Below, piece by piece: positions 1 to 64,000 of a stretch of 64,000 nucleotides of DNA (the first letter of the stretch is position 1; the number at the start of each line of letters is the position of its first letter). Position numbers and translations under genes: made by a program. The stretch spans positions 9,548,001 to 9,612,000 of the forward strand of contig OZ296656.1 of the NCBI GenBank assembly GCA_965655095.1, given 5' to 3'. The notes under the pieces are model-generated. The model saw nothing but the letters and a program-made list of their open reading frames with translations. It was not told where the DNA came from and made no database searches. This DNA comes from Haplodiscus bocki. Lineage: Eukaryota.

Positions 1-3000
1 TAAAACCTCACTTTTACATTTTCATCCCAGAGTAATTCCCTTGAACTTCACACCCTTCACTTTTTTATATCATGACAATTTCAACCCATTACAATATCAA
101 TCCCTTACAGTTTCATCCCATAAAACTTCAACCCATTGCAATTTCATCCCATACAACTTGCTCTGCTGGCACTTTAAATCCATCACGATTTCTTCCGATG
201 ACAGTCTCAGCCGACAAAAAACCCAACTCCTTACATTTTCTTTTTATAGAACTTCAAGCCCTGGCACTTTACACCCATTACATGTTCATCCCATGACAAA
301 TGCACATCATTAAAACTTCAGCCAACTACAAGTTCATCCCATACAACTTCAACTTTTTGCGCTTTACATCCATCAGAATTTCATTTCATAACCTTTTCAC
401 CACAATAAAGTCTCAATGCTTTACATTTTGATCCCATAAAAACTTCAACCTCTTGCAACTTCCACATAACAGTTCTATTCCATGACAATTTCAACACATT
501 AAACTTTCAACCCCGTACAACATCAAACGCTTGCACATTCAGCCGATCACAATTCCATTCCGTGACAATTTCACAGCAATAAAAAATCAACCCATTACAA
601 ATTCATCACATACAACTTCAACAACCTGCTTTTCACAACCACCACAATTTTATCCCATGATGATTTCACCCCATTGAATTTTCAAACCCATACACCTTCA
701 TCCCAAACTACTTCAACCCTTTGCACTTAACACAAAACGCAATTTCATCCAACCACCAATGCACTCCAAAAAAATTCAACACCTTACAAATTCAAGCCGT
801 ACAACTTGCGCCCCTGGCACTTTTAACACTTCAGGATTTCGTCTGATGACACTTTCAGCCGACAGAAAATCCCAAACCCTTACATTTCCTTTTTGAACAA
901 CTTTAAACCCTGGCACTTTGCACCCTTTACATGTTCATGCGGTAACAAATGCACCCCAATAAAATTTCAACCCACTACAAAATCACCCCACACAACTCCA
1001 ACTTTTTGCGCTTCACATCCATCACAATTTCAGCCCACTAAAAACTCAACCCTTTACAATTTCATCCCATGAATCTTCGATGCCTTGCATGTAAAGTGCA
1101 CCATCATTTTATCCCATGACAATTTCAACCCAAAAAATTTCAACAATTCACAGTATCATCCCATGACAATTTCACCCCATTAGAATTTCTACTCATCACA
1201 ATTTCACCACATACAACTACAACAACTTGCATTTTACAACCATCACAAATTCATCCCATGACATTTTCACCCCATTGAAATTTCACACCCCTTACACTTT
1301 CATCCCAAACAACTTCAACCCCTTGACTTTTAAACCCACCACAATTCAGACCCTGAAAATTTCACCCTATTACAAAACCAAGAACTCACATTTTCATCCC
1401 AAGACTGTTTCACGCCATTAAAACCTCACTTTTACATTTTCATCCCATAGTAATACCCTTGAACTTCACACCCTTCACTTTTTTATATCATGACAATTTC
1501 AACCCATTACAATATCAATCCCTTACAGTTTCATCCCATAAAACTTCAACCCATTGCAATTTCATCCCATACAACTTGCTCTGCTGGCACTTTAAATCCA
1601 TCACGATTTCTTCCGATGACAGTCTCAGCCGACAAAAAACCCAACTCCTTACAATTTCGTTTTATAGAACTTCAAGCCCTGGCACTTTACACCCATTACA
1701 TGTTCATCCCATGAAAATTGCACATCATTAAAATTTCAGCCAACTACAAGTTCATCCCATACAACTTCAACTTTTTGCGCTTTACATCCATCACAATTTC
1801 ATTTCATAACCTTTTCACCACAATAAAGTCTCAATGCTTTACATTTTGATCCCATAAAAACTTCAACCTCTTGCAACTTCCACATAACAGTTCTATTCCA
1901 TGACAATTTCAACACATTAAACTTTCAACCCCGTACAACATCAAACGCTTGCACATTCAGCCGATCACAATTCCATTCCGTGACAATTTCACAGCAATAA
2001 AAAATCAACCCATTACAAATTCATCACATACAACTTCAACAACCTGCTTTTTACAACCACCACAATTTTATCCCATGATGATTTCACCCCATTGAATTTT
2101 CAAACCCATACACCTTCATCCCAAACTACTTCAACCCTTTGCACTTAACACAAAACGCAATTTCATCCAACCACCAATGCACTCCAAAAAAATTCAACAC
2201 CTTACAAATTCAAGCCGTACAACTTGCGCCCCTGGCACTTTTAACACTTCAGAATTTCGTCTGATGACACTTTCAGCCGACAGAAAATCCCAAACCCTTA
2301 CATTTCCTTTTTGAACAACTTTAAACCCTGGCACTTTGCACCCTTTACATGTTCATGCGGTAACAAATGCACCCCAATAAAATTTCAACCCACTACAAAA
2401 TCACCCCACACAACTCCAACTTTTTGCGCTTCACATCCATCACAATTTCAGCCCACTAAAAACTCAACCCTTTACAATTTCATCCCATGAATCTTCGATG
2501 CCTTGCATGTAAAGTGCACCATCATTTTATCCCATGACAATTTCAACCCAAAAAAATTCAACAATTCACAGTATCATCCCATGACAATTTCGCCCCATTA
2601 GAATTTCTACTCATCACAATTTCACCACATACAACTACAACAACTTGCATTTTACAACCATCACAAATTCATCCCATGACATTTTCACCCCATTGAAATT
2701 TCACACCCCTTACACTTTCATCCCAAACAACTTCAACCCCTTGACTTATAAACCCACCAAAATTCAGACCCTGAAACTTTCTCCCTTTTACAATAGCAAG
2801 CCCTAACATATTCATCCCAAGACTATTTCACGCCCTTAAAACCTCACTTTTACATTTTCATCCCATAGTATTTCCCTTGAACTTCACACCCTTCACTTTT
2901 TTATATCATGACAATTTCAACCCATTACAATATCAATCCCTTACTGTTTCATCCCATAAAACTTCAACCGCCTTGCAATTTCATCCCATACAACTTGCAC

Positions 3001-6000
3001 TGCTGGCACTTTAAACCCATCACGGTTTCTTCCGATGACAGTCTCAGCCGACAAAAAACCCAACTCCTTACATTTTCATTTTATAGAACTTCAAGCCCTG
3101 GCACTTTACACCCATTACATGTTCATCCCATGAAAAATGCACATCATTAAAATTTCAGCCAACTACAAGTTCATCCCATACAACTTCAACTTTTTGCGCT
3201 TTACATCCATCACAATTTCATTTCATAACCTTTTCACCACAATAAAGTCTCAATGCTTTACATTTTGATCCCATAAAAACTTCAACCTCTTGCAATTTCC
3301 ACATAACAGTTCTATTCCATGACAATTTCAACACATTAAACTTTCAACCCCGTACAACATCAAACGCTTGCACATTCAGCCGATCACAATTCCATTCCGT
3401 GACAATTTCACAGCAATAAAAAAATCAACCCATTACAAATTCATCACATACAACTTCAACAACCTGCTTTTTACAACCACCACAATTTTATCCCATGATG
3501 ATTTCACCCCATTGAATTTTCAAACCCATACACCTTCATCCCAAACTACTTCAACCCTTTGCACTTAACACAAAACGCAATTTCATCCAACCACCAATGC
3601 ACTCCAAAAAAATTCAACACCTTACAAATTCAAGCCGTACAACTTGCGCCCCTGGCACTTTTAACACTTCAGGATTTCGTCTGATGACACTTTCAGCCGA
3701 GAGAAAATCCCAAACCCTTACATTTCCTTTTTGAACAACTTTAAACCCTGGCACTTTGCACCCTTTACATGTTCATGCGGTAACAAATGCACCCCAATAA
3801 AATTTCAACCCACTACAAAATCACCCCACACAACTCCAACTTTTTGCGCTTCACATCCATCACAATTTCAGCCCACTAAAAACTCAACCCTTTACAATTT
3901 CATCCCATGAATCTTCGATGCCTTGCATGTAAAGTGCACCATCATTTTATCCCATGACAAGTTCAACCCAAAAAATTTCAACAATTCACAGTATCATCCC
4001 ATGACAATTTCACACCATTAGAATTTCTACCCATCACAATTTCACCATATACAACTACAACAACTTGCATTTTACAACCATCACAAATTCATCCCATGAC
4101 ATTTTCACCCCATTGAAATTTCACACCCCTTACACTTTCATCCCAAACAACTTCAACCCCTTGACTTATAAACCCACCAAAATTCAGACCCTGAAAATTT
4201 CTCCCTTTTACAATAGCAAGCCCTAACATATTCATCCCAAGACTATTTCACGCCCTTAAAACCTCACTTTTACATTTTCATCCCATAGTATTTCCCTTGA
4301 ACTTCACACCCTTCACTTTTTTATATCATGACAATTTCAACCCATTACAATATCAATCCCTTACTGTTTCATCCCATAAAAATTCAACCGCCTTGCAATT
4401 TCATGCCATACAACTTGCACTGCTGGCACTTTAAACCCATCACGGTTTCTTCCGATGACAGTCTCAGCCGACAAAAAACCCAACTCCTTACATTTTCGTT
4501 TTATAGAACTTCAAGCCCTGGCACTTTACACCCATTACATGTTCATCCCATGACAAATGCACATCATTAAAATTTCAGCCAACTACAAGGTGATCCCATA
4601 AAACTTCAACTTTTTGCTCTTTACATACATCAAAATTTCATTGCATAACCTTTTTACCACAATAAAGTCTCAACGCTTTACATTTTAATCCCATAAAAAC
4701 TTCAACCTCTTGCAATTTCCACATAACAGTTCTATTCCATGACAATTTCAACACATTAAACTTTCAACCCCGTACAACATCAAACGCTTGCACATTCAGC
4801 CCATCACAATTTCATTGAGTGACAATTTCACAGCATTATATATTCAACCCATTACAAATTCATCACATATAACTTCAACAACCTGCTTCCTACAACCATC
4901 ACAATTTCATCCCATGACAATTTCACCCCACTGAATTTTCAACCCCTTGCACTTTCAACCCAAACAACTTGAACTCTTGCACTTAACACAAAACGCAATT
5001 TCATCCAACCACCAAAGCACTCCAAAAACATTCAACACCTTACAAATTCATCCCGTACAACTTGCACCCCTGGCACTTTTAACCCTTCACGATTTCGTCT
5101 GATGGAACTTTCAGCCGACAGAAAAACCCAAACCCTTACAATTTTTTTTTAAACAACTTTAAACCCTGGCACTTTGCACCCACTACATGATCATCCGGTA
5201 ACAAATGCAACCCAATAAAATTTCAACCCACTACAAGTTCACCCCACACAACTCCAACTTTTTGCGCTTCACATCCATCTTAATATCATCACATGGCAAT
5301 TTCAGCCCACTAAAACCTCAATCCTTTACAATTTCATATATGATTCTTCGATGTCTTGCATTTAAAGTGCACCATCAGTTTATCCCATGACAATTTCAAC
5401 CCAAAAAAATTCAACATTTCACAGTATCTTCCCATGACAATTTCACCCCATTAGAATTTCTACCCATCACAATTTCACCACATACAACTACAACAACTTG
5501 CATTTTACAACCATCACAAATTCATCCCATGACATTTTCACCCCATTGAAATTTCACACCCCTTACACTTTCATCCCAAACAACTTCAACCCCTTGACCC
5601 TTAAACCCACCACAATTCAGACCCTGAAAATTTCAACCTTTTACAAAATCGAGCCCTCACATATTCATCCCGAGACTATTTCACGCCATTAAGACATCAC
5701 TTTTACGTTTTCATCACATAGTATTTCCCTTGAACTTCACACCCTTCACTTTTTTATATCATGACAATTTCAACGCATTACAATATCAATCCATTACAGT
5801 TTCATCCAATAAAACTTCAACCCCTTGCAATTTCATCCCATACAACTTGCACTGCTGGCACTTTAAACCCATCACGATTACTTCCGATGACAGTGTCAGC
5901 CGACAAAAAACCCAACTCCTTACATTTTCGTTTCATACAACTTCAAGCCCTGGCACTTTGCACCCCTTACATGTTTATGCGGTAACAAATGCACCCCAAA

Positions 6001-7100
6001 AAAAATTCAACCCACTACAAGTTCACCCCACACAACTCCAACTTTTTGCGTTTCACATACATCACAGTTTCAGCCCACTAAAACATCAACCCTTTACAAT
6101 ATCATCCCATGAAACTTCGATGCCTTGCATTTAAAGTGCACCATCATTTTATCCCAAGACAATTTCAACCCAAAAAGTTTCAACATTTCAAAGTATCATC
6201 CCATGACAATTTCACCCCATTAGAATTTCTACCCATCACAATTTCACCGCATACAACTACAACAACTTGCATTTTACAACCATCACAAATTCATCCCATG
6301 ACATTTTCACCCCATTGAAATTTCACACTCCTAACACTTTCATCCCAAACAACTTCAACCCCTTGACTTTTGAGCCCACCACAATTCAGACCCTGAAAAT
6401 TTCACCCTTTTACAAAATCGATCCCTCACATATTCATCCCAAGACTATTTCACGCCATTAAAACCTCACTTTTACATTTTCATCACATAGTATTTCCCTT
6501 GAACTTCACACCCTTCACTTTTTTTATCATGACAATTTCAACCCATTACAATATCAATCCCTTACTGTTTCATCCCATAAAACTTCAACCCCTTGCAGTT
6601 TCATCCCATACAACTTGCACTGCTGGCACTTTAAACCCATCACGATTTCTTCCGATGACAGTCTTAGCCGAAAAAAGACCCAACTCCTTACATTTTCGTT
6701 TTATACAACTTCAAGCCCTGGCACTTTACACCCATTACATGTTCATCCCATGACAAATGCACATCATTAAAATTTCAGCCAACTACAAGTTCATCCCATA
6801 AAACTTCAACTTTTTGCTCTTTTCATCCATCAAAATTTCATTGCATAACATTTTTAAAACAATAAATTCTCAACCATCTACATTTTAATCCCATAAAAAC
6901 TTCAACCCCTTGCAATTTCCACATAACAGTTCTATCCCATGACAATTTCAACCCCTTAAAATTTCAACCCCGTACAACTTCAAACGCTTGCACATTCAGC
7001 CCATCACATTTTCATTCCATGACAATTTCACCCAAGTGAATTTTCAACCCCTTACACTTTCATCCCAAGAAACTTCAACCCCTTGCACTTAAAACAAAAC
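1..7100. repeat. HOR domain 1: 1418-bp unit (~15 monomers), 4 full copies, one 769-bp deleted copy, then a diverging partial copy
   Basis: Homologous ORF starts at 72, 1490, 2908, 4328 and 5761 give spacings of 1418, 1418, 1420 and 1433. 5730->6499 and 5498->6267 are both 769. Confidence 0.92.
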
Positions 7101-7725
7101 GCATTTTCATCCAACGACCAATTCACTCCAATAAATTTCAACTCCTTACAAAATCATACCGTAGATCTTGCACTCCCGGCACCTTAAACCCATCACAGTT
7201 TCTTCCGATGACAGTTTCAGCCTAGACAAAACCCAAACCCTCATATTTTCATTTTAAACAACTTCAAACCCTGGCACATTATATCCATTACATGTTCATC
7301 TCGTGACAATTTCACCCCAATAAAAATTCAACCCTTTAGATTTTCCTCCCGTAAAACTTCGACCCCTTGCATTTTAAGCGAACCACGTTTTATCCCATGA
7401 GAACTTGAAGCCAATAGAAATTCAACATTTACATTTTCATCCCATTCAACTTTAACCCCCTACAATTTTCACCTAACACAGATTTGTTCCATGACAATTC
7501 CAACCCATCAAAATTTCAACTCGATACAACTTCAAACCCCTGCACTTCAAGTCTGACACAATTTCATCCCTTGACAGTTTCACTCCATTATTTTTTCAAC
7601 CCATTACGAATTCATCACATACAAGTTCAACACCTTGATTTTTGCAACGATCACAAATTCATCCCAAGACATTTTCACCCCATTGAATTTTCGCACCCCT
7701 TACATTTTCATCCCAATATCTTCAA

Positions 7726-10700
7726 CCCCTTGACCTTTAAACCCAACACATTTCAGGACCTGAAAACTTCACCCTATTACAAAATCAAGCCCTCACATAA
7801 TTATCCCAAGACTATTTCACGCCATTAAATTTCCACCTTTACATTTTCATCCCATAGTGTTTCCCTTGAACTTCACACACTTCACATTTCTATAACATGA
7901 CAATATCAACCCATTACAATATCAATCCCTTATAGTTTCATCCCATATATCTTCAACCCTTTGCAATTTCAACCCATACAACTTCGAGCCTTGTACCTTA
8001 CTCACAGCACGACTTCATTCCATGACATTTTTAATCCAATAAAAGGGAAACCCCTTACAATTTCATTTCTTACAGTTTCAACTCCTTGCATTGTGAACCC
8101 ACTACACTTTCATTCCATGACAAATTCAACCCACTAAAAAAGTCAACCCCTTAAATCTTCATCCCATGCAACTTCAACCCCGTGCACTTCGCACAAATTG
8201 AAAATTCTTCCAGTGACCACTTCAACCCTTTGAAAATTCAAAACCTTACAAATTCACCCTGTACATCTTGCACCATGGACGTTTTTATCCCATCACAATT
8301 TCTTCTGACGACTATTTCAACCCATTAAATTTCAATCCCTTTAAAATTTCATCCCATACCACTGCAACTCATTTGAATTCAAATCCGTCACTTTTTCACC
8401 CCATGACAGTGTTACCCCATTAAGAAAACATCTCCTTAAAAAGCCATCTAATAAATTTTCAGCCCCTTGCACTTCAAACCCATCACACTTTCATCACATG
8501 ATGTTTTCACCCCATTAAAATTTCAACCCCATACAACTTCAAACGCTTGCACTTTCAGCCCATCACAATTTCATTGAGTGACAATTTCACAGCATTATAT
8601 ATTCAACCCATTACAAATTCATCACATATAACTTCAACAACCTGCTTCCTACAACCATCACAATTTCATCCCATGACAATTTCACCCCACTGAATTTTCA
8701 ACCCCTTGCACTTTCAACCCAAACAACTTGAACTCTTGCACTTAACACAAAACGCTATTTCATCCAACGACCAATTCACTTCAATAAATTTCAACACCTT
8801 TCAAAATCATCCCGTACAACTTGTACACCTGGCACCTTAAACCCATCACAATTTCTTCCGATGACAGTTTCAGCCTAAAAAACCCAACGCCTCATAATTT
8901 CATTTTAAACAACTTGAAACCCTGGCACATCACATGCATTACATGTTCATCCCGTGACAATTTCACCCGAATAAAAATTCAACACTTTACAATTTCCTCC
9001 CGCAAAACTTCGACCCCTTGACCTTTAAACCCAACACAATTCAGGCCCTCAAAACTTCACCATATTACAAAGTCAAGCCCTCAGATATTCATCCCAAGAC
9101 TATTTCACGCCATTAAATTTCCACCTTTACATTTTCATCCCATAGTGTTTCCCTTGAACTTCACACACTTCACAATTCTATAACATGACAATATCAACCC
9201 ATTACAATATCAATCCCTTATAGTTTCATCCCATAAATCTTCAACCCTTTGCAATTTCAACCCATACAACTTCGAGCCTTGTACCTTACTCACAGCACGA
9301 CTTCATCCCATGACATTTTTAATCCAATAAAAGGGAAACCCCTTACAATTTCATTTCTTACAGTTTCAACTCCTTGCATTGTGAACCCACTACAATTTCA
9401 TTCCATGACAAACTCAACCCATTAAAAAAGTCAACCCCTTAAATCTTCATCCCATGCAACTTCAACCCCGTGCACTTCGCACAAATTGAAAATTCTTCCA
9501 ATGACCACTTCAACCCTTTGAAAATTCAAAACCTTACAAATTCACCCTGTACATCTTGCACCCCGGACGTTTTTATCCCATCACAATTTTTTCTGACGAC
9601 TATTTCAACCCATTAAATTTCAATCCCTTTAAAATTTCATCCCATACCACTGCAACTCATTTGAATTCAAATCCGTCACTTTTTCACCCCATGACAGTGT
9701 TACCCCATTAAGAAAACATCTCCTTAAAAAGCCATCTAATAAATTTTCAGCCCCTTGCACTTCAAACCCATCACACTTTCATCACATGATGTTTTCACCC
9801 CATTAAAACTTCAACCCCATACAACTTCAAACGCTTGCACTTTCAGCCCATCACAATTTCAATCCGTTACAATTTCACAGCATTAAAAAGTCAACCCTTT
9901 AAAAATTCATCTTAAACAACTTCAACAACCTGCTTTTTACAACCAACACAATTTCATCCCATGACAATTTCACCCCATTGAATTTTCAACCCCTTACTTT
10001 TCCACCCCAAACAACTTCAACCACTTGCACTTAACACAAAACGGAATTTCAACCAACGACCATTTCACTCCAATAAATTTCAACACCTTACAAAATCATC
10101 CCGTAACACTTGCACCCCTGACACCTTAAACCCATCACAATTTTTTCCGATGGCAGTTTCAGCCTACAAAAATCCCAACCCCTCTTATTTTCATTTTAAA
10201 CAACTTCAAACCCTGGCACATTACATCCATTACATGTTCATCCTGTGACAATTTCACCCCAATAAAAACCTAACCTTTTACATTTTCCTCCCATAAAATT
10301 TCGACCCCTTTGCATTTTAGGCGCACCACGATTTTATCCTATGACAACATCAAACCAATAAAAGTTCAACATTTACAGTTTCATCCCATTCAACTTTAAC
10401 CCCTTACAAACTTCACCTAACACAGATTTGTTCCATGATATTTTCACCCCATTGAATTTTCAACCCCTTACACATTCACACCAAACAACTTGAACCCATT
10501 TCACTCAACACAGAAGGCAATTTCATCCAACGACCAATACACTCCAATAAATTTCAACACCTTACAAATTCATCCCGTGACAAATTCACGTGACAATTTC
10601 ACGTGACAATTTCACGCCATTAAAATTTCTACCTAACACAATAATTTCATCACATACAACTACAACAACTTGCTTTTTACAGCCATCACAAATTCGTCCC

Positions 10701-11560
10701 ATGACATTTTCACCCCATTGAATTTTCACATCCCTTACACTTTCATCCCAAACAACTTCAGCTCCTTGCCGTTTAAACCCACCACAATTCAGGCCGTGAA
10801 AATTTCACCCCATTACAAAATCAAGCCCTCCTATATTCATCCCAAGACTATTTCACGCCATTAAAATTCCACCTTTACATTTTCATCCAATAGTATTTCC
10901 CTTGAACTTCACACCCTTCACAATTCTGTATCATGACAATTTCAACCCATTACTTTATCAATCCCTTCCAGTTTCATCCCATAAAACTTCAACCCCTTGC
11001 AAAATCATCCCATACAACTTCGAGTCTTGCACTCTACTCACAGCACGACTTCATCCCATGACATTTTTAATCCAATAAAAGGGAAACCCCTTACAATTTC
11101 ATTTCTTACAGTTTCAACTCCTTGCATTGTGAACCCACTACACTTTCATTCCATGACAAATTCAACCCACTAAAAAAACAACTCCTAAAATTTCATCCCA
11201 TGCAACTTCAACCTCGTGCACTTCGCACAAAATGAAATTTGTTCTAATGACCACTTCAACCAATTGAAAATTCAAACTCTTACAATTTCACCCTGTACAT
11301 CTTGCACCCCGGACAGTTTTAACCCAACGCGATTTCGTCTGATGGCTATTTCAACCCTTTATTATTCAATCCCTTTAAAAATTCATCCCATATAACTTCA
11401 ACTGATTTAAATTCAAATCCGTCACTTTTTCACCCCTCGACAGTATCACCCCATTATAAAAACAACTCCTTAAAAAGTCATCCAATAAATTCTCAACCCC
11501 TCGCACTTCAAAACCATCACACTTTCATCCCATGACGTTTTCAACCCATTAAAAACTCAA
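7726..11560. repeat. HOR domain 2: related units of 1288 bp and 1748 bp plus a diverging partial third copy
   Basis: The GGG of the distinctive AATAAAAGGGAAACCCC landmark is at 8045, 9333 and 11081. TATTTCACGCCATTAAA is at 7813, 9101 and 10849, a landmark shared with domain 1. The right boundary is approximate. Confidence 0.85.
10576..10614. repeat. Micro-tandem, 3 x 13 bp (CGTGACAAWTTCA)
   Basis: Read directly: cgtgacaaattca cgtgacaatttca cgtgacaatttca. Confidence 0.9.
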
Positions 11561-12830
11561 TCCCTCATAATTTCTTCCTGGACAGATTCAACTCCTTGCA
11601 TTTTAAACCTATCACTTTTTCACCCCATGACTATGTCAAACCACTAAAAATTCAACTCCCTAAAATCCTTCCCATAAAACCTCAACTAACTGCATAAAAA
11701 AACAATCATTTTTTCAGCCCATGACAGTGTCACACCTTTAAAAAATCATTTCCTTAAAAAATCATCCTATCAAAATTCAACCACTTGCACTTTATACCCA
11801 TCACACATTCCTCCCATGACATTTTCACTCCAACAAAAATTGCACCCCTAACCATTTCATCCCGAACGATTTAGACCCCTCGCACTTCGAACCCATCACA
11901 CTTTCATCCCATGACAATTTCAACCCAATAAAAACTGAACCCTTAACGAATTCATCTCAGACAACTTCAACTCTTTGCATTTCAAACCCATCTTAATTTC
12001 ATCCCATGACATTTTCAACCATTTAGAAATTCAAACCCCCATATTTACATCCCACACAACTTCAACTGGTTGCAATTTAAACCCATCAGTTTTTCAGTCC
12101 ATGACAGTATCACCCCATTAAACGTTCAACCCCATAAAACTTCATCCCATCATCCTATAGGATTTCAGCCCCTTGCTCTTTACACCCATCATAATTTCAT
12201 CCCATGACAATTTCACTTCAATGAATAGTCAACCTTTTACAAAATCATCACATACAGTTTCAACCCTTGCACTATAAACCCACCACCTTCTCAGACGCCG
12301 AAAATTTCACCCCAATACAATTTCAACCCCTAACACTTTCATCCCATTCATTTTCAACCCCTTGCAATCTGAACCCTTCGTTCTTTCGGCCAATGACAGT
12401 TTCACTCCATTAAAATGTCAGCTCTCACAATTTCATCCCAGACTTTATCCAGCACTTTCACAATACACCCATCACAACTTCATATCATTACAAATTCACA
12501 CCTCTAATTTTTCAACTCTTTACATTTTTATCCCATAAGAATTCAACTCCTCGCACTTCAAACCCAACACAATCTCATCCCATGACCTTTCCACCCAATT
12601 AAAATTTCAATCCCGCACAATTTCATCCCATGTGTTTTCAACTCCTTCCACAAAAAACCCATCACTTTTTCAGCCCATGAGAGTGTCACCCCATTGAATG
12701 TTCAACTCCTTAAAAAATCAGCCTACAAAACTTCAACCACTTGCACTCTACACCCATCAGAATTTCATCCAATGACTTTTTAACCCCATTAAAAATTGAA
12801 CCCCTAACAATTTCATCCCAAATATTTAAG

Positions 12831-53000: not shown

Positions 53001-56000
53001 ACAAGTTCACCCAATTAAAAACTCAGTCCTTCACAAGTTCATCCAATACAACTTCAACCACTTGCTATTTAAACGCGCCACACTTTCAGACATTGACAAT
53101 TTTGTCCCCATTACAATTGCAACCCCTTACAATTTCAAGTCATACAAATTCACACCCTTGCACTCTGAACCCAAAACAGGTTCTTTCCATGACAGTTTCA
53201 ACCAATTAAACTTTTAACCACTGGAGATTCCAATCCATACAACTTCAACCCTTTGCGTTATAAACCCACCACAAATTCAGACCCCGACAATGTTACACCA
53301 TTACAATTGCAACCCCTTACAATTACAACTCATACAACTGAAACCGTTGCGCCTTAAAGCAATCACATTTTCATCCCATGGCAATATCACCCCCTTATAA
53401 CGTCAACCCCTCAAAAGTTCTTACCCTAAAACATCAAACCTTTGCATTTTATTTTAAACCCATCACATTTTCTTTCCGTAGCAGTTTCAACCCAATGAAA
53501 CCTCAATCATTTAAATTTCGCACTTCATATTCTACATCATTTCATCCTACGACAAGTTCACCCAATTAAAAACTCAGTCCTTCACAAGTTCATCCAATAC
53601 AACTTCAACCACTTGCTATTTAAACGCGCCACACTTTCAGACATTGACAATTTTGTCCCCATTACAATTGCAACCCCTTACAATTTCAAGTCATACAAAT
53701 TCACACCCTTGCACTCTGAACCCAAAACAGGTTCTTTCCATGACAGTTTCAACCAATTAAACTTTTAACCACTGGAGATTCCAATCCATACAACTTCAAC
53801 CCTTTGCGTTATAAACCCACCACAAATTCAGACCCCGACAATGTTACACCATTACAATTGCAACCCCTTACAATTACAACTCATACAACTGAAACCGTTG
53901 CGCCTTAAAGCAATCACATTTTCATCCCATGGCAATATCACCCCCATGAAAACCTCAACCTACTAAAAATAAACCCCATGAAACTTTAAAATTTGCACAT
54001 CATATTCAATATCATTTCATGCCATGACATTTTCACCCCATTAAAAAATTGCCCCTTACACATTCATCCCACACAACGTCAAACCTTGCACTATAAACCC
54101 AACACAATTTTGGACCGTGACAATTTTACCACATTACAAATGCAACCCCTTACAATTTCATTTCATACAACTTCAAACCCTTGCGCGTTAAACCCATCAC
54201 AGTTTCAGCCCATGACAATTGCACAACATTTAAGTTTCAATCCTTTACAGTTTCATCCCATACAATTTCTTCCCGGCGCACTTCAAACCCATCACACATT
54301 CGTCTCAAAACAATTTCAACCCAACAAAAAACGAAGGCCTCACATTTTCGTCCCAAAAGACTTCAAACCCTTGCCCTTTAAACAGACCCCAAATTCAGAC
54401 CCTGAAAACTTTACTCTAGTACAATTGCAACTTCTTAGAATTACATCTCTTACAACTTCACACCCTTGAACCTTTAGCCTATCACATTGTAATCCCATGG
54501 CAACTTCACTCCGATGTAACGTCAACACCTTAAAAAACGTTCCCTTAAAACATCAACACCTTGAACTGTAAACCCATCACACTTTCATCCCTTGTCAATT
54601 TCTTCCCAATGGAACCTCAACCCGCAAGAAGTTCATCCCATTCAACTTGATTCCCTTGCACTTCAAACCCACCATAATTTAAGACACTGACCGTTTGAAC
54701 CCAATACAAATGCAACCCCTTACAAATTCATCTCATACAAAATCAAAGCTTTTCACCTTAAACCCATCACAGGTTAATCCCATGACAGTTTCACCCCATT
54801 AGGATCTAAATCCCCTAAATTTCATCTCATACAAGTTCAATCACTTGCACCTTAAACCCATCACAGTTTCATCCCATGGCAGTTTCACCCCTTTATAGCA
54901 TCATCCTTTGAAAAATTCATCCCTTGAAACCTCACTCCAAGAAAAAGTCAAACCCTTAAAGTTTCTTCCCCAAAGCTTCCACCCCTTGCACTGTAAACAC
55001 ATCACAACTTCCCTCCTTGGCAATTCCACCCCAATAAAACCTCAACCCCTTATAATGGCATCCCAACAAACTTCAACCATTGCACTTCATACTCAACACC
55101 ATTTCAACCCTTGATAATTTGACCCCGTTTAAAACCTATTCCCTCACAATATCGTCCCTTACAACTTCAACCCCATGCAAATTAAACCTGCCACCACTTC
55201 AGACCCTGACAAATTTTACCCCATTACAAACGCAACCGATTAAAAATTCTTCTCATACAAATTCAAACACTTGCACCTTAAAGCCATCACAGTTTCATCC
55301 ATGAAAATTTCACCCCATAACAATTTCAACCCATTACAGTTTCGTCCCACACAATTTCAACACCGCACATTTTACACCCATCGCAATTCATCTCATGACG
55401 GTTTCACCCCATTAAAATTTCAAGGCCTCACACTTTCACTCTATAAAACTTCAACCCTTTGCACATTAAACCCACCAAAATGTGAGACCCTGGCAATTTT
55501 ACCCCATTACAATGGCAACCTTTACAATTTCTTGCCATACAACTTCAACCCTTTGCGTTATAAACCAACCACAATTTCAGACCCTGACAATAATACCCCA
55601 TTACAATTGCAACCCCTTACAATTACATCTCATACAACTGAAACCGTTGCACCTTGAACCCATCACATTGTAATCCCATGGCAACTTCACCCCCTTATAA
55701 CGTCAACCTCCTAAAAGTTCATACCCTAAAACTTCATACATTTGCATTTTAAACTCATCAATTTTCATTCCATAGCAGTTTCAACCCAACAAAACCTCAA
55801 TCCCTGAAGTTTTGCAATTCATACTCTACATCATTTCATCCTACGACAGTTTCAACCAATTGAAAACTTAGTCCCTCACAAATTCATCCAGTACAACTTC
55901 AAGCCCTTGGGCCTTAAACCTACCTCAATTTCAGACCCTGACAATTTTAATCTATTACAATTGCAACCCCTCACACTTTTATCTCATACAACTTCAAATC

Positions 56001-57200
56001 CTTGCACTTTAAGCCACTCACAATTTCATCCCATGGCAATTTCACCCCAATGAAACCTCAAACTCCTAAAAATATATCCCATGAAACTTCAATACTTGCA
56101 CATCATTTTCAATATCATTTCAACCAATGACAATTTCACCTCAATAAAGTTTCAATGGCTCAAAATTTCTTCCCAAAAAACTTCAACCCCTTGCACTTTA
56201 ACCCCGCCAATGTTTCAGACAATGACAATTTTGTCCCCTTTACAATTGCAACCCCTTACAATTTCATGTCATACAACTTCAAACCCTTGTACTCTAAACT
56301 CAAAACAGGTTCATTCCATGACAGCTGCAACCGATTGAACTTCGCGTTATAAACCCACCACAATATCAGACCCTGACAATATTACCCATTACAATTGCAA
56401 CCCATTACAAATACATCTCATAAAACTGAAACCGTTGCACCTTAAACCCATCACATTGTAATCCCATAGCAACTTCACCCCCTTATAACGTCAACTCGTT
56501 AAAAGTTCTTACCCTAAAACTTTATACCCTTGCATTTTAAACCCATCAGATTTTCTTTCCATAGCAGTTTCAACCCAATAAAACTTCAATACTTTAAATT
56601 TTCCACTTCATATTCTACATCATTTCATCCTACAACAAGTTCACCCAAATAAAAACAGTCCCTCAAAAATTCATCCAATACAACTTCAACCCCTTGCTAT
56701 TTAAACCCGCCACAGTTTCAGACATTGACAATTTTGTCCCCATTACAATTGCAACCCCTTACAATTTCAAGTCATACAAATTCACACCCTTGCATTCTGA
56801 TCCCAAAACAGGTTCTTCCCATGACAGTTTCAACCCATTAATTTTTCAACCACTGAAATTTCCGAACCATACAACTTCAACCCTTTGCGTTATAAACCTA
56901 CCACAAATTCAGACCCTGAGAATGTTACCCCATTACAATTGCAACCCCTTACAATTACATCTCATACAACTGAAACCGTTGCACCTTAAGCCCATCACAT
57001 TGTAATCCCATGGCAACTTCACCCCCTTATAACGTCAACCCCTCAAAAGTTCTTACCCTAAAACATCAAACCTTTGCATTTTATTTTAAACCCATCACAT
57101 TTTCTTTCCGTAGCAGTTTCAACCCAATGAAACCTCAATCAATTAAATTTCGCACTTCATATTCTACATCATTTCATCCTACGACAAATTCACCCAATTA
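41020..57200. repeat. Modular HOR domain built from blocks Y (788 bp), Z (543-551 bp) and X (1744-1749 bp)
   Basis: Block boundaries fall at the ATCACATTKTMATCCCATRGCAA landmark: 41020 Y, 41808 Z', 42358 X, 44107 Y/Z hybrid, 44650 Z'/Z hybrid, 45201 Z', 45752 X, 47496 (YZ)x4, 52823 Z', 53374 Z', 53925 X, 55674 YZ, 57006 Z' head. These match the ORF offsets 551, 1332, 3394 and 8173-8178. Confidence 0.88.
47496..52822. repeat. 1332-bp HOR (~14 monomer lengths) x4, near-identical; fifth copy at 55674-57005
   Basis: ORF series 47634/48966/50298/51630, 47903/49235/50567/51899 and 48516/49848/51180/52511. Confidence 0.95.
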
Positions 57201-59099
57201 AAAACAATACTCCTCACAAAGTCATCCCATACAACGTCAAGCCCTTGCAGTATAAACCCACGCGAATTTTGGACCGTGACCTTTTACCACATTACAAATG
57301 CAATCCCTTGCGATTTCATTTCAAACAATCTCAAACCCTTGCACCTTAAACCCAACACAGTTTCATCCCATTACATTTTCACAACATTTAAATTTCAATC
57401 CTTTACAGTTTCATCCCATACAAATTCAACCCGGCGAACTTCAAACCCATCACAATTTCTTTCCATGACATTTTCACCCCAATAAAAACTCAATGCCTCA
57501 CAATTTCATTCCAAAAAACTTCAACCCCTTGCACATTAAACCCACCACAATTTGAGACCCTGGCGATTTTACCCCATTACAATTGCAACCCTATACAATT
57601 TCATGTGCATACAACTTCAAACCTTTGCACTTTAAGCCCATCACGTGTTCATTCCATGACAGTTTCACCCATTAAACTTTCAATCAGTTAAAGTTTCAAC
57701 CCATAAAACTTCAACCCTTTGCGTTATAAACCCACCACAAGTTCAGACCCTGACAATATTAGCCCATTACAATTGCAAGCCCTTACAATTACATCTCACA
57801 CAACTGGAACCGTTGCACCTTAAACCCATCGCATTGTAATCCCATTGCAACTTCAACCCCTTAAATAGTCAACCCCTTAAAGTTTCTTACCCTAAAATTT
57901 CATACCTTTGCATTTTAAACTCAACACAATTTCATTCCATAGCAATTTCAACACAATAACATCCCAATCTTTTGAAACTTGCACTTCATAATCTACATAG
58001 TTTCATCCTACGACAGTTTCACCCAATAAAAAACTCCGTCCCTCTCAACTTCATCCAATACAACTTCAAGCCCTTGGGCTTCAAACCCACCTCAATTTCA
58101 GACCCTGACAATTTTAGGCTTATACAAAGGCAACCCCTTACATTTTTATCTCATACAACTTTAAATCCTTGCATTTTAAACCAATCACATTTTCATCCCA
58201 TGGCAATATCACCCCCATGAAAACTTCAACCTGCAAAAAATAAATCCCATGAAATTTCAATATTTGCATATCATATTCAATATCATTTCATGCCATGACA
58301 ATTTCAACCCAATAAAAAATTGCCCCTTACACAATCATCCCACACAACGTCAAGCCTTGCACTATAAACCCACCACAATTTTGGACCGTCACAATTTTAC
58401 CACATTAAAAATGCAACACCTTACAATTTCATTTCATATAAATTCAAACCCTTGCACCTTAAACCCATCACAGTTTCAACCCATGACAACTTCACAACAT
58501 TTAAGTTTCAGTACTTTACAGTCTCATCCCATACAATTTCAACCCGGTGCACTTCAAACCCATCACAATTTCATCTCATGACATTTCCACCCCAAAAAAA
58601 CTCAAGGCCTCACAATTTCATTCTCAAGAAAACTTCAACATTTGCACTTCATTTCCAACACCAATTCCCCCCTTGACACTTTCAACCCGTTTAAAACCTA
58701 TTCCCTCACAATATTGTCCCTTACAACTTCAACCCCATGCAATTTAAACCTGCCACCACTTCAGACCCTGGTAAAGTTTACCCCATTACAAGCGCAACAC
58801 ATTAAAATTCTTCTCATACAAATTCAAACACTTGCACCTTAAAGCCATCACAGTTTCATCCATGACATTCTCACCCCATAACAGTTTCAACCCCTTACAG
58901 TTTCGTCCCACACAATTTCAACCCGGCACACTTTACACCCATCACAGTTCCATCTCATGTCAATCTCACCCAATTAAAAACTCAATCCCTCACACTTTCA
59001 TTCCAGAAAACTTCAACCCCTTGCACCACAAATTCAGACCCTGGAATTTTAACCCCATTACAATTGCAACCCCTTATGAAGAAAACTCATAGAACTTAA

Positions 59100-62000
59100 A
59101 CCTCTTTCACTTTAAACACATCACAAATTCATCCCATGTTAATTTCACCCCAAGAAATCTTCTACCCCTTAAAATTACATCCCATAAAACATCAACCTCT
59201 GCACTTGACATTCAACACCAGTTCACCCCTTGACATTTGAACTCCATTTAAAACTCAATCCCTCACAATTTCATTCCATACAATTTCAACACCTTGCAAT
59301 TTAAACCCGTCAAATTTTCAAACCCTGACAATTTTACGTCTCTACAATTACACTCCCTTACAGTTTCATCTCATACATTTCTAACACTCGCAATATAAAC
59401 CCTTCAAGTTTTCATCCCATCACAATTTCAACCCATCAAAAAATTTCAACCCCTTACAGTTTCATCCGATACAATTTCAAAACTTCGTTCTTCTAACCCA
59501 CCACAATTTCACACCAATAAAAACTCAACTCCTTACAAGTTCATCACTTACAATTTTAACCCTTGCATTTTACACCCATCACAATTTCATCAGATGACAT
59601 TTTTACCCCATTAAAAAGCTGATACCCTTACAGTTTCTTCCAATCCAATTTCAACCGTTCGCACTTTAAAACCATCACACTTTAAACCCAAGGAAATTTT
59701 ACCCAAATACAATATAACCCCTGACAAAATCATCCCATACAATTTCCAGCCCTTGAACTTCAAAATCATCCAATACAATTTCCAGCCCTTGAACTTTACA
59801 CCAATCACAATTTCAGATCAAGACAATTTCACCATTTTAAAATTTCATCCCTTTACATTTTCATCCCATACATCTTCCATCCTTGCACTATACACCCATC
59901 ACAGTTTCTTCCCATGGCATTTTCACCACAATAAAACCTCAACCCCTTAAAAGTACATCCCTTAAAAGTTCAATACTTGCACTTCGTATTCAATATCTTT
60001 TTATCCCATGACAACTTTACCCAATTAAAAGCTCAATCCCTCACAAATTCATCCCATACAACATATACCCCTTGCACTTTAAAACCACCATAAATTCGGA
60101 CCCGGAAAATTTTACCCCATTACAATTGCAACCCCTACAACTTCATCTCATACAACTTCAAACCTTTGCACTCTAAGCCCATCACATTGTAATCCCATGG
60201 CAATTTCACCCCATTATATCGTCACCCCCCTAAAATTTCATGCCTTAAACTTTCAACCCATTGCACTTTAAACATCTACAACTTCATTTCAAGCCAACTT
60301 CAACCCAATAAAACCTCAACCCCTTAAAAATACATCCCAAAAAAATCAACCCCTGCACTATATATTCAATACCATTCCATCCATGACAATGCCATTCCAT
60401 CAAATACTCAATACCTTACAATTTCACCTCATACAACTTCGAGCGCTTGCTTTTTCAGCCAATCACACTTTCATCCCATGGGAATTTCATTGTGTTGAAA
60501 TTTCTATCCAGCACAATAACATCCCATACAACTTCAAATTCTGGCACTTACACCTACCACATTTTCAGACCCTAACAATTTGATCCCATTACAACTGCAA
60601 CACTTTGAATGTTCATCTCAAACAACTTCAAACCTTTGCAGTTTAAAGCCATCAGATTTTCATTCCATGGCAATTCCAATCCATTGTAACGTCATCCCGT
60701 CAAAATTTCATCCCTTGAAAATTCAACCCATAGAACTTTAAATCCATCACTTCTTCATTCGATGGCAATTTCACTCCACTAAATGCTCAACCACTCAAAA
60801 AAACATCCCATAAAACTTAAAATCTTATACTTCATTTTAAACACCACTTCATCGCATGACAATTCCACACCTTTTGAATTTGAACTTGATACATATTCAT
60901 CCCATACAAATTCAACCCATCACAGTTTCATCCCGTGACAGTTTCACCCCATTAAAAATCCAATCCCTTACAAATTCACCTCATACAACTTCAAACACTT
61001 GCACTTCAAATCCATCACACTTGAATCCCAAGATAAGTTCACCCAATAAATGTTCAAACCCTTACATTTTCATCCCACAAAACTTCGACCCCTCGCATTC
61101 CAAACCCAACACAATTTCGTAATATGATAATTCCACCCCATTAAAAACTCATCCGCTAACAGTTTCATCGCATACAAATTCAAGCCCTCGAACATTAAAC
61201 ACACCACAATTTCAGACCCTGGCAAATTTACCCCAATACAATTGCAACACCTTAAAATTTCTTCTCATAAAACTTCAAATCCTTGAAACTTATACCCATC
61301 ACAGGTTCATCCCATGACAGTTTCAACCCATTAACAAGTCAACCGTTGCAATTCATATTCAACACCATTTCAACCCATTACGGTTCCACCAAAATAAAAA
61401 CTCTATCCCTCGCAATCTCATCCGATACCATTTCGATCCCTTGCACTTTAAACCCTTCACAATTTCATACCATGACAATTTAACCCCAACAAATTTTTAA
61501 CCAATTACATTTTGAGTCCTTACAACTTCAACATTTTGCATTAAAATTTGATCCCTTACTTCTCCATCCCATACAAATACCAGCCCCTGCACCTTAAATC
61601 CATCACAACTTCACATATTAATATTTTCACCCTTTTAAATTTTCAAACCTTCACAAATTCATCCCATAAAAAGTCAACCTTTGCAGTTGAAACCCATCGA
61701 TTTTTCTGCGCATGACAAGTTCACACCTTCAAAACTTCACCACTTTAAAAATTCATCCCATCCAATTTTAACACCTTGCATTTTCAGCATCACGTTTTCA
61801 GCCACTGACTATTTAACCACATTACCAGTTCAACAGTTTTCAGTTTCTTCCCAAACAAATTCAAGCCCTTGCAATTTAAAACCATCACTTTTCATCCCAC
61901 GACAATTTCTCCCCATTAAAAATTTCGAGCCATTTCAAATTCATTCCATACAACTTCAACCCCTCGCACTTTAAACATATTTCATTTTCAGACCCTGAAC

Positions 62001-63011
62001 AATTCACTCCACTAGAACATCAACTCCGTAAAAAGGCATTCCTTTGCAGTTAAATCCACCAAATATTCTGACGCTGACACTCTTACCCCAATAAAAATGC
62101 AACACTTTACAATGTCATCCCATACAACTTCAACCCGTTGCAATTTGAACCCCTCACTGTTTGAGCCCATGACAATTTCAACCCATCGACATTTCAACCA
62201 CTACAATTTCATCCCATACAGTTTGCAGTTTTTGCACTTAACACCCATCACAATTTCATATCAAAACGATTTCTCATCTTACAATATTAAACCTTTCACA
62301 ATTTCATCCAATACAACTTCAACGGTTGGTCTTATAAACATAACACATATTCAACCCATGACAATTTCATCCCATATAAACTTCAATCCCTTAATATTTA
62401 TCACATACAATTTCAACACGTTGCATTTTACACCCTTCAAACCCCCATCTCATTGAAGATACAACCCACTAAAAATCAACCCCTACTGTTTTCATCCCAT
62501 ACAATTTCAACTCTTTGCACTTTACACCCATCATAATTTCATCCCATGAAAAATTCACACCAATACCTTTTTAGGCCTTTACAATTTTATCCCATACGAA
62601 CTCAACCACTTGCATTTTATACCCAATACACGTTCACTTTATGATAATTTCATTCTATTCGAATTTCAACCCCGTACATTTTCTTCCCATACAATTTCCA
62701 CACCTTGCACTTTACACCCATTACAATTTCATCTCATGATATTTTCATCCCCCTAAAAGTTTAACCAACTAACAGTTCCATCCTATACAGTTTCAACCCC
62801 TTACACTTTATACATATCACATTTTCATCCCATGACAATTTCAACGAACTACTAATGAAACCTCTCACCATTTGATCTCTTAACAGTTGAGTCCATGCAC
62901 TTCACACCAATCGAAACTTCATCCCATGTCAATTTAAGACCTTTAAAACTTCAACTCTTCTTACCTTCATCCCATACAATATCAACCCTTTGCACTTTTA
63001 ATCCTTCTTAA
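59100..63011. repeat. Diverged monomeric satellite zone, no HOR recognised
   Basis: 95-bp phasing is retained, but neighbouring monomers differ strongly and no ORF translation is duplicated here. Confidence 0.7.
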
Positions 63012-64000
63012 TTTCATCCCATGACAATTTCAAACCATCAAATCTTCAAACTCCTACAGTTTATTCTCATAAAACTTAAACTTTTTGCTCTTTACACACT
63101 TCCCAAATTCAACGCAAGTCAATTTCATTCCATTAAAATTTTAACCCCTGAAGATTTCGTCTCATACAACTTCAACACTTTGCACTTTACACCCATCACA
63201 TTTTCATCCCATGACAATTTCCTTCCCTTAAAACTTCAGCCGCTTACTTTTTCATCCCAAACACTTTCAGCACCTTGCTTTTTAAACCCATCACAGTTTC
63301 GTCCAATGACAATTTCACCCAATACAATATCGACCCCCTTACATTTTCATCACATACTTGTTCAACAACTTGCACTTTACACCCTTCGAATTTCCATCTC
63401 ATGGCATTTTACCCCACTAAAATTTCAAGTTATAACAATTTCATCCAAAACAACTTCAACCACTTGAACTTTACACGCATCATAATTTCATCCAATGGCA
63501 ATATCACCCCAATATGTTTTTATACCCTCACAATTTTGTCCCATACGGCTTCCACCACTGGCACTCTAAACCCATCACAACTTCTTCCAATAAAAATATC
63601 AACCCTTTACATTATCATCCCATACATTTTCAACCCTTTGCTCTATAAACGCTTCACAAATTCATCCCATGGCAATTTCTTCCCAATAAGATTTTAACCC
63701 CTGACGTCTTCATCCCAAACAACTTCAACAAATTGCACCATACACCCATCACATTTTCATCAACTGACAGTTTCAACACATTAAAACTTCAAGCCTTACA
63801 ATTGATCCCTTATAACTTAAGTCCTCTCACTTCACAACAAACACATTTTCATCCCATGACAATTTCAAACCATCAAATCTTCAAACTCCTACAGTTTATT
63901 CTCATAAAACTTAAACTTTTTGCTCTTTACACACTTCCCAAATTCAACGCAAGTCAATTTCATTCCATTAAAATTTTAACCCCTGAAGATTTCGTCTCAT
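63012..64000. repeat. Start of an 835-bp duplication or HOR, truncated by the window edge
   Basis: 63847-64000 matches 63012-63165 (ATGACAATTTCAAACCATCAAATC at 63021 and 63856). Confidence 0.88.

What the first reader, a model, noticed from the sequence alone, without database searches (positions are those of the whole stretch)
1..64000. Multi-tier satellite: 16 bp -> 95 bp -> 190/380 bp -> 0.5-1.7-kb HORs -> 3-8-kb super-units, laid out in layers
Seen: every tier can be read from landmark spacings. Each zone has its own diagnostic monomer variants: CAGCCGACA at 1-7 kb; TTTTTCAGCCCRTGACAGTGTCACCCC at ~11-26 kb; TTCAGACCCTGACAAT...ACAATTGCAACCCC and ACATTGTAATCCCATGGC mainly at 27-60 kb. Established: homogeneous HORs alongside diverged monomeric layers is the architecture of primate alpha-satellite centromeres. 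Inference: this is an actively remodelling satellite family that I do not recognise, possibly centromeric, in which at least six distinct HORs arose locally within 64 kb.
Basis: partly seen in the sequence, partly recalled or inferred. Interest (0 to 1): 0.7.

Follow-up and report, generated by a model that had tools for sequence, protein, structure and literature searches.

The report
Satellite grown from a transposon arm
The whole window is a real, many-layered non-coding tandem repeat (16-bp pieces, 95-bp units, kilobase repeats), but it is most likely one hugely overgrown arm of a small jumping gene, and nothing here points to a centromere.

Summary
All 64 kb are one C-rich satellite with autocorrelation peaks at 16 and 95 bp. 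There are 698 monomers, each made of six 16-bp sub-repeats. Multi-monomer repeats of 1418, 1332, 1288 and 543-551 bp sit on top, and duplications of 3.4 to 11.6 kb on top of those. The 190/380-bp tier is only local and weak. Most "HORs" have 2 to 4.4 copies.

The centromere reading is not supported. The 95-bp family occupies a single locus: 94.6 kb of satellite on a 92.8-Mb chromosome, plus a 2.4-kb paralogue.

The array has defined ends. It starts at a conserved end sequence and finishes with a short spacer, a short inverted run of the same units and a second conserved end. Perfect 5-bp direct repeats flank the whole.

A 267-kb array of pure 16-bp units on another chromosome has the same two ends in mirror arrangement and its own 5-bp duplication. 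Both ends also recur at dozens of dispersed loci.

So these look like two copies of a foldback-like mobile element in which opposite arms grew into satellites, as described for Tetris in Drosophila virilis.

Earlier notes of this scan reported satellites born from transposon arms on other DNA of this genome.

An 18.6-kb Maverick/Polinton later inserted into the array.

The parts
1..64000 (+). Part of the long arm ('A-arm') of the element at C9:9,538,673-9,652,341. One uninterrupted head-to-tail array of 698 monomers of about 95 bp, C-rich on the + strand, each monomer made of six 16-bp sub-repeats.
   Evidence: element bounds
1..6072 (+). 1418-1420-bp higher-order repeat, 4.3 copies. It has 16 monomer slots, four of them truncated (75, 80, 80, 52 bp). 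Neighbouring copies are 92.9-98.5% alike. It carries the CAGCCGACA variant.
7658..10310 (+). 1288-bp unit, 2 copies, 93% alike.
11365..19159 (+). Zone with a weak 379-bp (4-monomer) periodicity. TRF gives 69-72% matches at period 379 against 64-65% at period 95.
   Evidence: (lags 4 and 8: 0.733 against about 0.72)
12762..21076 (+). 4099-bp unit, 2 tandem copies. Positions 12831-16943 and 16930-21042 are identical over 4113 bp.
28009..36218 (+). 5.5-kb duplication (offset 5542-5543), 96% alike. It contains 190-bp dimer arrays at 30026-31130 and 35544-36484.
41686..57679 (+). Mosaic of re-copied blocks at offsets 3392, 8174 and 11565 bp (95-96% alike). It is rich in the ACAATTGCAACCCC and ACATTGTAATCCCATGGC variants.
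47357..53211 (+). 1332-bp higher-order repeat, 4.4 copies, 15 slots (94,94,72,94,95,95,94,96,55,93,95,72,92,96,95). Neighbouring copies are 98.8-99.4% alike. Monomers inside one unit are 73% alike.
43968..45797 (+). 543-551-bp unit (6 slots), about 3 copies. The same unit recurs at 52158-53960.
57700..63000 (+). Old monomeric stretch with almost no repeated 24-mers and no HOR. Similar stretches lie at about 10-12 kb and 25-28 kb.

Best explanation
The window lies inside one arm of a non-autonomous, foldback-like mobile element. Both arms of that element are built from a 16-bp unit (ATTTCAACCCATCACA type) pointing in opposite directions.

In the copy at C9:9,538,673-9,652,341 the left ('A') arm grew to 94.6 kb. 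A block of six diverged 16-bp units, one of them 1 bp short, first became the copying unit (95 bp). It spread to about 1000 copies, which drifted to about 72% identity. Unequal exchange or replication slippage between out-of-register monomers then kept re-copying blocks of 6 to about 120 monomers. That produced the local HORs and kilobase super-units, the youngest 99-100% identical. The right ('B') arm stayed at 266 bp.

In a second copy on C2 the opposite arm grew into 267 kb of plain 16-bp units.

Shown here:
- the tiers
- the element ends and the inverted short arm
- the 5-bp flanking duplications
- the dispersed matches of both ends
- restriction of the 95-bp type to one locus

Inferred:
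- mobility of the family
- the order of events
- unequal exchange as the copying mechanism
- absence of a cellular role
For: Hierarchy.

Single locus: one search places the diagnostic 15-mer almost only at C9:9.541-9.682 Mb. Searches give the array bounds.

Sister array: C2:56,633,720-56,900,810 has a lag-16 match of 0.75-0.84 and the unit ATTTCAACCCATCACA.

Inverted short arm: it follows a 30-260-bp spacer at the right end of all three arrays. The 16-mer with up to 3 changes gave only two hits, both inside the Maverick insert, in the roughly 115 kb of other DNA I held, yet it occurs in reverse right after each array.

Ends:
- The C2 left end aligns with the reverse complement of the C9 right end, in both C9 copies, over about 80 nt (A2).
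- The C9 left end aligns with the reverse complement of the C2 right end (A1).

Perfect 5-bp direct repeats lie at the inferred termini: ATTTC|...|ATTTC, GTTTC|...|GTTTC and CTGAC|...|CTGAC.

Dispersed copies:
- End-plus-spacer sequences hit 23, 7 and about 8 other loci on 10 or more chromosomes, on both strands, at 71-86% identity.
- Homology stops within 3 nt of the inferred termini.
- Both ends lie in the C2 arrangement at C9:64,792,091-64,792,459 (about 0.37 kb) and C4:100,178,411-100,179,920 (about 1.5 kb).
- Isolated satellite-word hits sit beside such end matches at C10:14.581 Mb, C1:159.075 Mb, C4:12.717 Mb, C2:30.519 Mb and C1093.

The six-slot 95-bp order ranks 1 of 120 slot permutations in the A-arms of both C9 copies. 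It does not in their B-arms or in the C2 array.

Non-coding: there is no Pfam hit in the longest ORFs, and 95 is not a multiple of 3. There is no Rfam hit.
Against: - Their structure is inferred from match coordinates only.
- The two C9 copies share flanks, so only two independent insertions (C9 and C2) were seen.
- The A and B termini are not clean inverted repeats of each other beyond their unit-like core (TGTCAA/TGTCAG).
- No transposase or autonomous partner was looked for.
- The 5-bp duplication differs between the two C9 copies by the same A/G change on both sides. A single insertion before the segmental duplication does not readily explain that.
- The assembly itself was not tested. The runs that hold the sequence come from one study and are short unitigs.
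Confidence: 0.7

Rival explanations
1. It is the centromeric or pericentromeric satellite of chromosome 9, with the 16-bp array as that of chromosome 2. The HOR layers would reflect centromere-driven homogenisation, as in primate alpha satellite.
For: - It has true HOR structure: 73% identity within a unit, 97-99% between units.
- The middle of the array is most homogenised and the edges are older.
- The neighbourhood holds other satellites: 130-bp units sampled at 9.40, 9.45 and 9.50 Mb and a 31/154-bp array at 9.669-9.674 Mb.
- A mobile element has inserted into the array, as often happens in centromeres.
Against: - The largest HOR has 4.4 copies, and there is no long homogeneous core.
- The 95-bp family sits at one locus only.
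- The array holds 94.6 kb of satellite on a 92.8-Mb chromosome.
- It is bounded by transposon-like ends and a target duplication.
- The neighbouring 130-bp family is a genome-wide dispersed repeat with 16,652 exact 21-mer hits on both strands, so it is no centromere marker.
- There is no excess of dyad symmetry (z -2.2 to +1.3).
- Earlier notes list many unrelated single-locus HOR satellites in this genome.
Confidence: 0.1
2. It is an ordinary locus-specific satellite that arose in place from random sequence. The inverted tail, the shared end sequences and the 5-bp repeats are by-products of array-edge rearrangements or chance.
For: - Array edges are known to rearrange.
- The A and B ends themselves resemble degenerate 16-bp units, so similarity between loci could partly reflect shared units.
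- Only two independent loci were read.
Against: - The non-unit parts of the ends (GGTGTCARGG..TTTC; GTTRCATGTCA) and the spacer also recur at dispersed loci on many chromosomes. Homology there stops at the same nucleotides.
- Perfect 5-bp duplications lie at all three elements exactly at those stops. My estimate for chance is about 1 in 1000 per fixed position.
- The flanks of C2 and C9 are otherwise unrelated.
Confidence: 0.12
3. Part of the youngest tier is an assembly artefact. The 4099-bp two-copy block with a 4113-bp mismatch-free run, and perhaps some HOR copy numbers, would be false duplications or collapses in a long-read assembly of a repeat.
For: - Everything else in the array differs by at least 0.6% between copies, but this pair is identical over 4113 bp.
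- The only public runs holding the stretch are from one study, and their contigs are too short to span a unit.
Against: - The duplicate's ends are diverged (99.5% over 4217 bp), as expected of a real event with later change.
- The other tiers show graded identities of 93-99.4%, which an artefact would not produce.
Confidence: 0.08

Closest known systems
Tetris foldback transposon and its TIR-220 satellite in Drosophila virilis (PMC4079207, read)
   Same: - A non-autonomous element with inverted arms that contain internal tandem repeats.
- A variable middle domain and no ORFs.
- Few structurally complete copies.
- The arm repeats have been amplified into satellite-like arrays.
   Different: - Units here are 16 bp and 95 bp, not about 220 bp.
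- Arrays reach 95 and 267 kb, against kb size there.
- Growth is one-sided, and on opposite arms in the two copies.
- The target duplication is 5 bp here and 8-10 bp in Tetris, so probably a different superfamily.
- There is no sequence similarity, and the host is a different animal phylum according to earlier notes, which I did not verify.
Drosophila FB (foldback) elements (from my own knowledge; Potter 1982 and later work, not checked here)
   Same: Arms are made of short tandem units that build up into longer periods towards the inside. Arms have unequal length. The central part is variable or missing.
   Different: The FB target duplication is 9 bp, and its arms are kilobases long, not hundreds of kilobases. 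No HOR tiers of the kind seen here are described to my knowledge.
Primate alpha satellite with higher-order repeats (abstracts of PMC5052062 and PMC4131833 as listed)
   Same: Diverged monomers are grouped into multi-monomer units that are nearly identical to each other. Younger homogenised parts lie beside older monomeric parts.
   Different: - The monomer is 95 bp, not 171 bp.
- HORs have 2-4.4 copies, where alpha-satellite HORs are reiterated thousands of times (PMC5052062).
- The family occupies one locus, not all centromeres.
- It is bounded by transposon ends.
- There is no evidence of kinetochore function.
Regular HORs in non-primate genomes, e.g. Tribolium castaneum (PMC5737470, abstract as listed)
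   Same: [quoted passage not shown]
   Different: I compared only at the level of the concept. The sequence families are unrelated.

Membership tests
Centromeric HOR satellite (alpha-satellite type) | Tandem monomers organised in multi-monomer units whose copies are far more alike than the monomers within a unit | tested here: met
   Identity is 73-74% within a unit and 93-99.4% between units.
Centromeric HOR satellite (alpha-satellite type) | A long homogeneous core of many HOR copies | tested here: not met
   The largest HORs have 4.3 and 4.4 copies. The array is a mosaic of small blocks.
Centromeric HOR satellite (alpha-satellite type) | Family present at the centromeres of all or most chromosomes | tested here: not met
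   The 95-bp type lies at C9:9.54-9.68 Mb only. The 16-bp type forms one large array, on C2.
Centromeric HOR satellite (alpha-satellite type) | Bound by CENH3/CENP-A and located at the primary constriction | not testable with these tools
   There are no chromatin or cytological data. No RNA run holds the stretch.
Foldback-like transposon with tandem-repeat arms (FB/Tetris type) | Two arms built of the same repeat units in inverted orientation, separated by a middle part | tested here: met
   The order direct array, 30-260-bp spacer, inverted units is seen at C9 copy 1, C9 copy 2 and C2.
Foldback-like transposon with tandem-repeat arms (FB/Tetris type) | Conserved terminal sequences shared between copies | tested here: met
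   Alignments A1 and A2. Homology to dispersed loci stops within 3 nt of the same termini.
Foldback-like transposon with tandem-repeat arms (FB/Tetris type) | Target-site duplication flanking the element | tested here: met
   Perfect 5-bp direct repeats flank three elements, which represent two independent insertions.
Foldback-like transposon with tandem-repeat arms (FB/Tetris type) | Multiple dispersed copies in the genome | tested here: inconclusive
   End sequences match dozens of loci on 10 or more chromosomes, and two loci have both ends in the right order. I could not read those loci.
Foldback-like transposon with tandem-repeat arms (FB/Tetris type) | Termini that are inverted repeats of each other, and a known transposase partner | tested here: inconclusive
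   The A and B termini share only a TGTCAA/TGTCAG core plus unit-like sequence. No transposase was sought.
Maverick/Polinton (the 18.6-kb insert beyond the window's right end) | Double-jelly-roll capsid gene, retroviral-type integrase, terminal inverted repeats, 6-bp target duplication | tested here: met
   PF21738 at 4.2e-9 and PF00665 at 4e-9. The 37-nt termini are identical in inverted orientation, and GAAGTC lies on both sides. Polymerase, protease and ATPase were not identified.

The most novel reading that the evidence does not exclude
This animal may have chromosome-specific centromeres, each a satellite array of 60-270 kb born from a different mobile element. The window would then be the chromosome-9 centromere and the 16-bp array the chromosome-2 one. 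That would fit the many unrelated single-locus HOR satellites that this scan has noted in the genome. My data neither support nor exclude it.
Probability: 0.08. Interest if true: 0.7.

Novelty: new member of a known kind. Interest (0 to 1): 0.4.

Why it matters
It is an unusually complete natural record of how a satellite is born and layered. The seed element survives with both ends and its target duplication. A short untouched arm preserves the primitive 16-bp state. A paralogous copy is frozen at 2.4 kb. A second copy of the element expanded its other arm without ever forming the 95-bp unit. The large array shows every later step: hexamer unit, 2- and 4-monomer periods, HORs, kilobase duplications and a dated Maverick insertion.

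This makes the order of steps, and the idea that HOR layout needs no centromere, directly testable in one genome. It also warns that 'alpha-satellite-like' architecture by itself is a poor predictor of centromeres in this genome.

Tried and rejected
- Maverick as the source of the satellite. I rejected it here: the Maverick has its own 6-bp duplication, and the 95-bp monomer reads straight through the insertion site. A related Maverick 7 kb left of the C2 array is separate from it.
- Positional orthology of monomers between the two C9 copies. None rises above the 68-70% background.
- Distinct monomer subfamilies per zone. Median identity is 0.72 within and between zones.
- Hairpin or dyad potential. 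Energies are weak and z-scores run from -2.2 to +1.3.
- Coding potential. ORFs of 90 to 185 aa occur on the G-poor strand only and have no Pfam hit.
- Rfam gave nothing.
- Literature word searches for the unit gave only one irrelevant primer-like hit.
- Exact-pattern scans of metagenome and viral contigs gave nothing.
- Reads. Logan unitigs of four runs (two samples, one study) hold the stretch, but they are 79-906 bp long and cannot show copy number or polymorphism.
I did not try to get those letters another way.
- The taxon was not verified. Earlier notes say acoel, and one says coral.
- The 200-N gaps near C9:9,531 kb and C2:56,901 kb were left alone.
Full report
WHERE THE WINDOW LIES. The window is G000:C9:9,548,001-9,612,000 on a 92.8-Mb contig of a 1.50-Gb assembly. 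Earlier notes of this scan call the organism an acoel worm, and one says coral. I did not test this.

THE OBSERVATION
- The window is uniform in composition: GC 0.36-0.39, GC skew -0.59 to -0.68, G only 7%.
- Self-match is 0.477 at lag 16 and 0.474 at lag 95, against 0.294 expected. Weaker peaks fall at 32, 63, 79, 190, 284 and 379.
- A wrap-around profile alignment gives 698 monomers, mostly 95 or 94 bp long.
- The consensus reads as six sub-repeats: ATTTCATCCCATGACA / ATTTCACCCCATTAAA / ATTTCAACCCCTTACA / ATTTCATCCCATACAA / CTTCAACCCCTTGCAC / TTTAAACCCATCACA.
- Monomers are about 72% alike at any distance and between any two zones. Even so, 69% have a twin at 95% or more and 53% at 98% or more.
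- The twins form blocks:
  - 1418 bp x4.3 (16 slots)
  - 1332 bp x4.4 (15 slots, neighbours 98.8-99.4% alike)
  - 1288 bp x2
  - 543-551 bp x3, at two places
  - two-copy duplications of 3.4, 4.1, 5.5, 8.2 and 11.6 kb
- Truncated slots of 80, 63-65 and 110-111 bp show that the 16-bp register still guides some indels.
- The 190- and 380-bp tier is real but local and faint.
- One duplicate (4099 bp) is identical over 4113 bp. This needs checking against long reads.
- The stretch is non-coding by every test I could run.

EXTENT AND NEIGHBOURS
- Sampling the chromosome shows that the satellite starts near 9,538,700 and ends near 9,651,890.
- It is interrupted at 9,623,648-9,642,219 by an AT-rich 18,572-bp element.
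- That element encodes a double-jelly-roll capsid-like protein and an rve integrase. Its termini are identical for 37 nt in inverted orientation, and it is flanked by GAAGTC on both sides. The 95-bp monomer continues across the site. It is therefore a Maverick/Polinton that inserted into the array. I only describe it.
- Without the insert, the satellite is 94.6 kb with 1024 monomers. The window is its most homogenised part, and both edges are older.
- A diagnostic 15-mer of the 95-bp type occurs 46 times in the genome. 38 of those lie at C9:9.541-9.682 Mb, against a control count of 6. The family is single-locus.
- The flanks are segmentally duplicated on C9 at 81-93% identity. The second copy holds only 2.4 kb of the same satellite, and there is a partial third copy.
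- Nearby satellites are unrelated. One is a 130-bp family that is dispersed genome-wide. The other is a 31/154-bp array.

THE SISTER ARRAY. A 20-mer of the unit also hits C2:56.63-56.90 Mb with spacings in multiples of 16. That region is about 267 kb of plain 16-bp units. Its lag-16 match is 0.75-0.84, it has no 95-bp period, and its unit is ATTTCAACCCATCACA. Each slot of the 95-bp consensus is about 2 to 4 changes from that unit (my count from the sequences).

THE TURN IN THE ARGUMENT
- Each of the three arrays ends on the right with a short spacer (185, 30 and 260 bp). A short run of the same units in reverse orientation follows.
- The unit with up to 3 changes gave only two hits, both inside the Maverick insert, in the roughly 115 kb of other DNA I held.
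- The sequence at the left end of the C2 array aligns with the reverse complement of the right end of both C9 copies (B-end: GGTGTCARGG...CATGCAAKTTCAAC).
- The left end of the C9 arrays aligns with the reverse complement of the C2 right end (A-end: ATWWRGTTRCATGTCA...).
- Perfect 5-bp direct repeats lie exactly outside these termini:
  - ATTTC at C9:9,538,673-9,652,341
  - GTTTC at C9:9,680,503-9,683,082
  - CTGAC at C2:56,633,720-56,900,810
- The ends and the spacer match dozens of other loci on at least ten chromosomes, on both strands, at 71-86% identity. Homology stops within 3 nt of the same termini.
- At C9:64.792 Mb (about 0.37 kb) and C4:100.18 Mb (about 1.5 kb) both ends lie in the C2 order.
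- Isolated satellite-word hits sit beside such end matches.

I read this as a family of small foldback-like mobile elements. The A-arm of the C9 copy and the B-arm of the C2 copy have grown by three orders of magnitude.

WHEN THE 95-BP UNIT AROSE. The six-slot order beats all 119 other slot orders in the first 300 bp of the A-arm of both C9 copies and in an old part of the window. It does not in the short B-arms or in the C2 array. So the plain 16-bp series is the primitive arm state. The 95-bp hexamer arose in the C9 A-arm lineage, before or independently of the locus duplication.

MECHANISM (INFERRED). The likely mechanism is out-of-register exchange or slippage within one array. A unit of six diverged sub-repeats was fixed first. 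After long divergence, blocks of 6 to about 120 monomers were copied repeatedly and locally. Graded identities give at least three age classes: 72% between monomers, 81-93% between the duplicated flanks, and 93-100% between blocks.

CENTROMERE. Nothing here asks for it. There is no long homogeneous core, the family occupies one locus, and the array holds 94.6 kb of satellite. The array has transposon ends, and there is no dyad excess. It cannot be excluded without chromatin data, and I give it about 10%.

KNOWN PARALLELS. The closest is Tetris in Drosophila virilis, a foldback element whose arm repeats seeded satellite arrays. Its target duplication is 8-10 bp (PMC4079207). The present case differs in unit size, array size, one-sided growth and its 5-bp duplication. 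No described family matched by sequence in the resources I had. Dfam and Repbase were not available.

LIMITS
- The dispersed copies were not read.
- Only two independent insertions were examined.
- The public runs are one study's unitigs.
- The assembly was taken at face value.

Noticed in passing
C9:9,623,648-9,642,219 (L034:1648 to L036:219), 11.6 kb beyond the window's right end: An 18,572-bp AT-rich (22-29% GC) Maverick/Polinton-like element sits inside the satellite. It has capsid-like and integrase ORFs, 37-nt termini identical in inverted orientation, and a 6-bp duplication GAAGTC. A relative with about 68% nucleotide identity lies 7 kb left of the C2 array.
   Followed up: partly
C9:9,538,668-9,538,672 / 9,652,342-9,652,346 versus C9:9,680,498-9,680,502 / 9,683,083-9,683,087: The 5-bp duplication is ATTTC on both sides of copy 1 and GTTTC on both sides of copy 2, although the flanks are paralogous. 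The possible causes are two parallel changes, independent insertions at the same paralogous site, or conversion. This is unexplained.
   Followed up: no
window 12,831-21,042: A two-copy tandem duplicate of 4099 bp has a 4113-bp run without a single mismatch. Every other repeat tier differs by at least 0.6%. It is either a very recent event or a false duplication in the assembly.
   Followed up: partly
C9:9,400,001-9,502,000 (L014-L016, 2-kb samples at three points): A different, G-rich-strand tandem family of about 130 bp (GAGTATCAAGATT...GTCTCACAGTGCCGAAAA), with a 374-bp higher period. A 21-mer from it has 16,652 exact hits genome-wide on both strands, mostly in small clusters. It is a major dispersed repeat of this genome.
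   Followed up: partly
C9:9,669,075-9,674,000 (L038:7075 onwards): A 31-bp / 154-bp tandem array (TTAACCGGAAAAATAGCGGCGTTAACGGCGT), unrelated to the finding.
   Followed up: no
C9:9,652,343-9,652,970 (L037:343-970): A different dispersed repeat of about 650 bp starts right after the 5-bp duplication at the element's right terminus. It had 659 first-look candidates at 67-75% identity. Short inverted matches at its far end suggest a MITE.
   Followed up: no
C9:9,615,001-9,617,000, 9,622,001-9,623,600 and 9,642,200-9,643,000: Here the array switches from a 95-bp to a roughly 216-220-bp period, while the 16-bp period persists. The switch continues across the Maverick insertion site.
   Followed up: no
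window 40,000-60,000: The zone-specific variants ACAATTGCAAC and ACATTGTAATCC are partly complementary and give a small stem (ATTACAAT / ATTGTAAT) in that zone only. The folding z-scores there are -1.6 and -2.2, which is marginal.
   Followed up: partly
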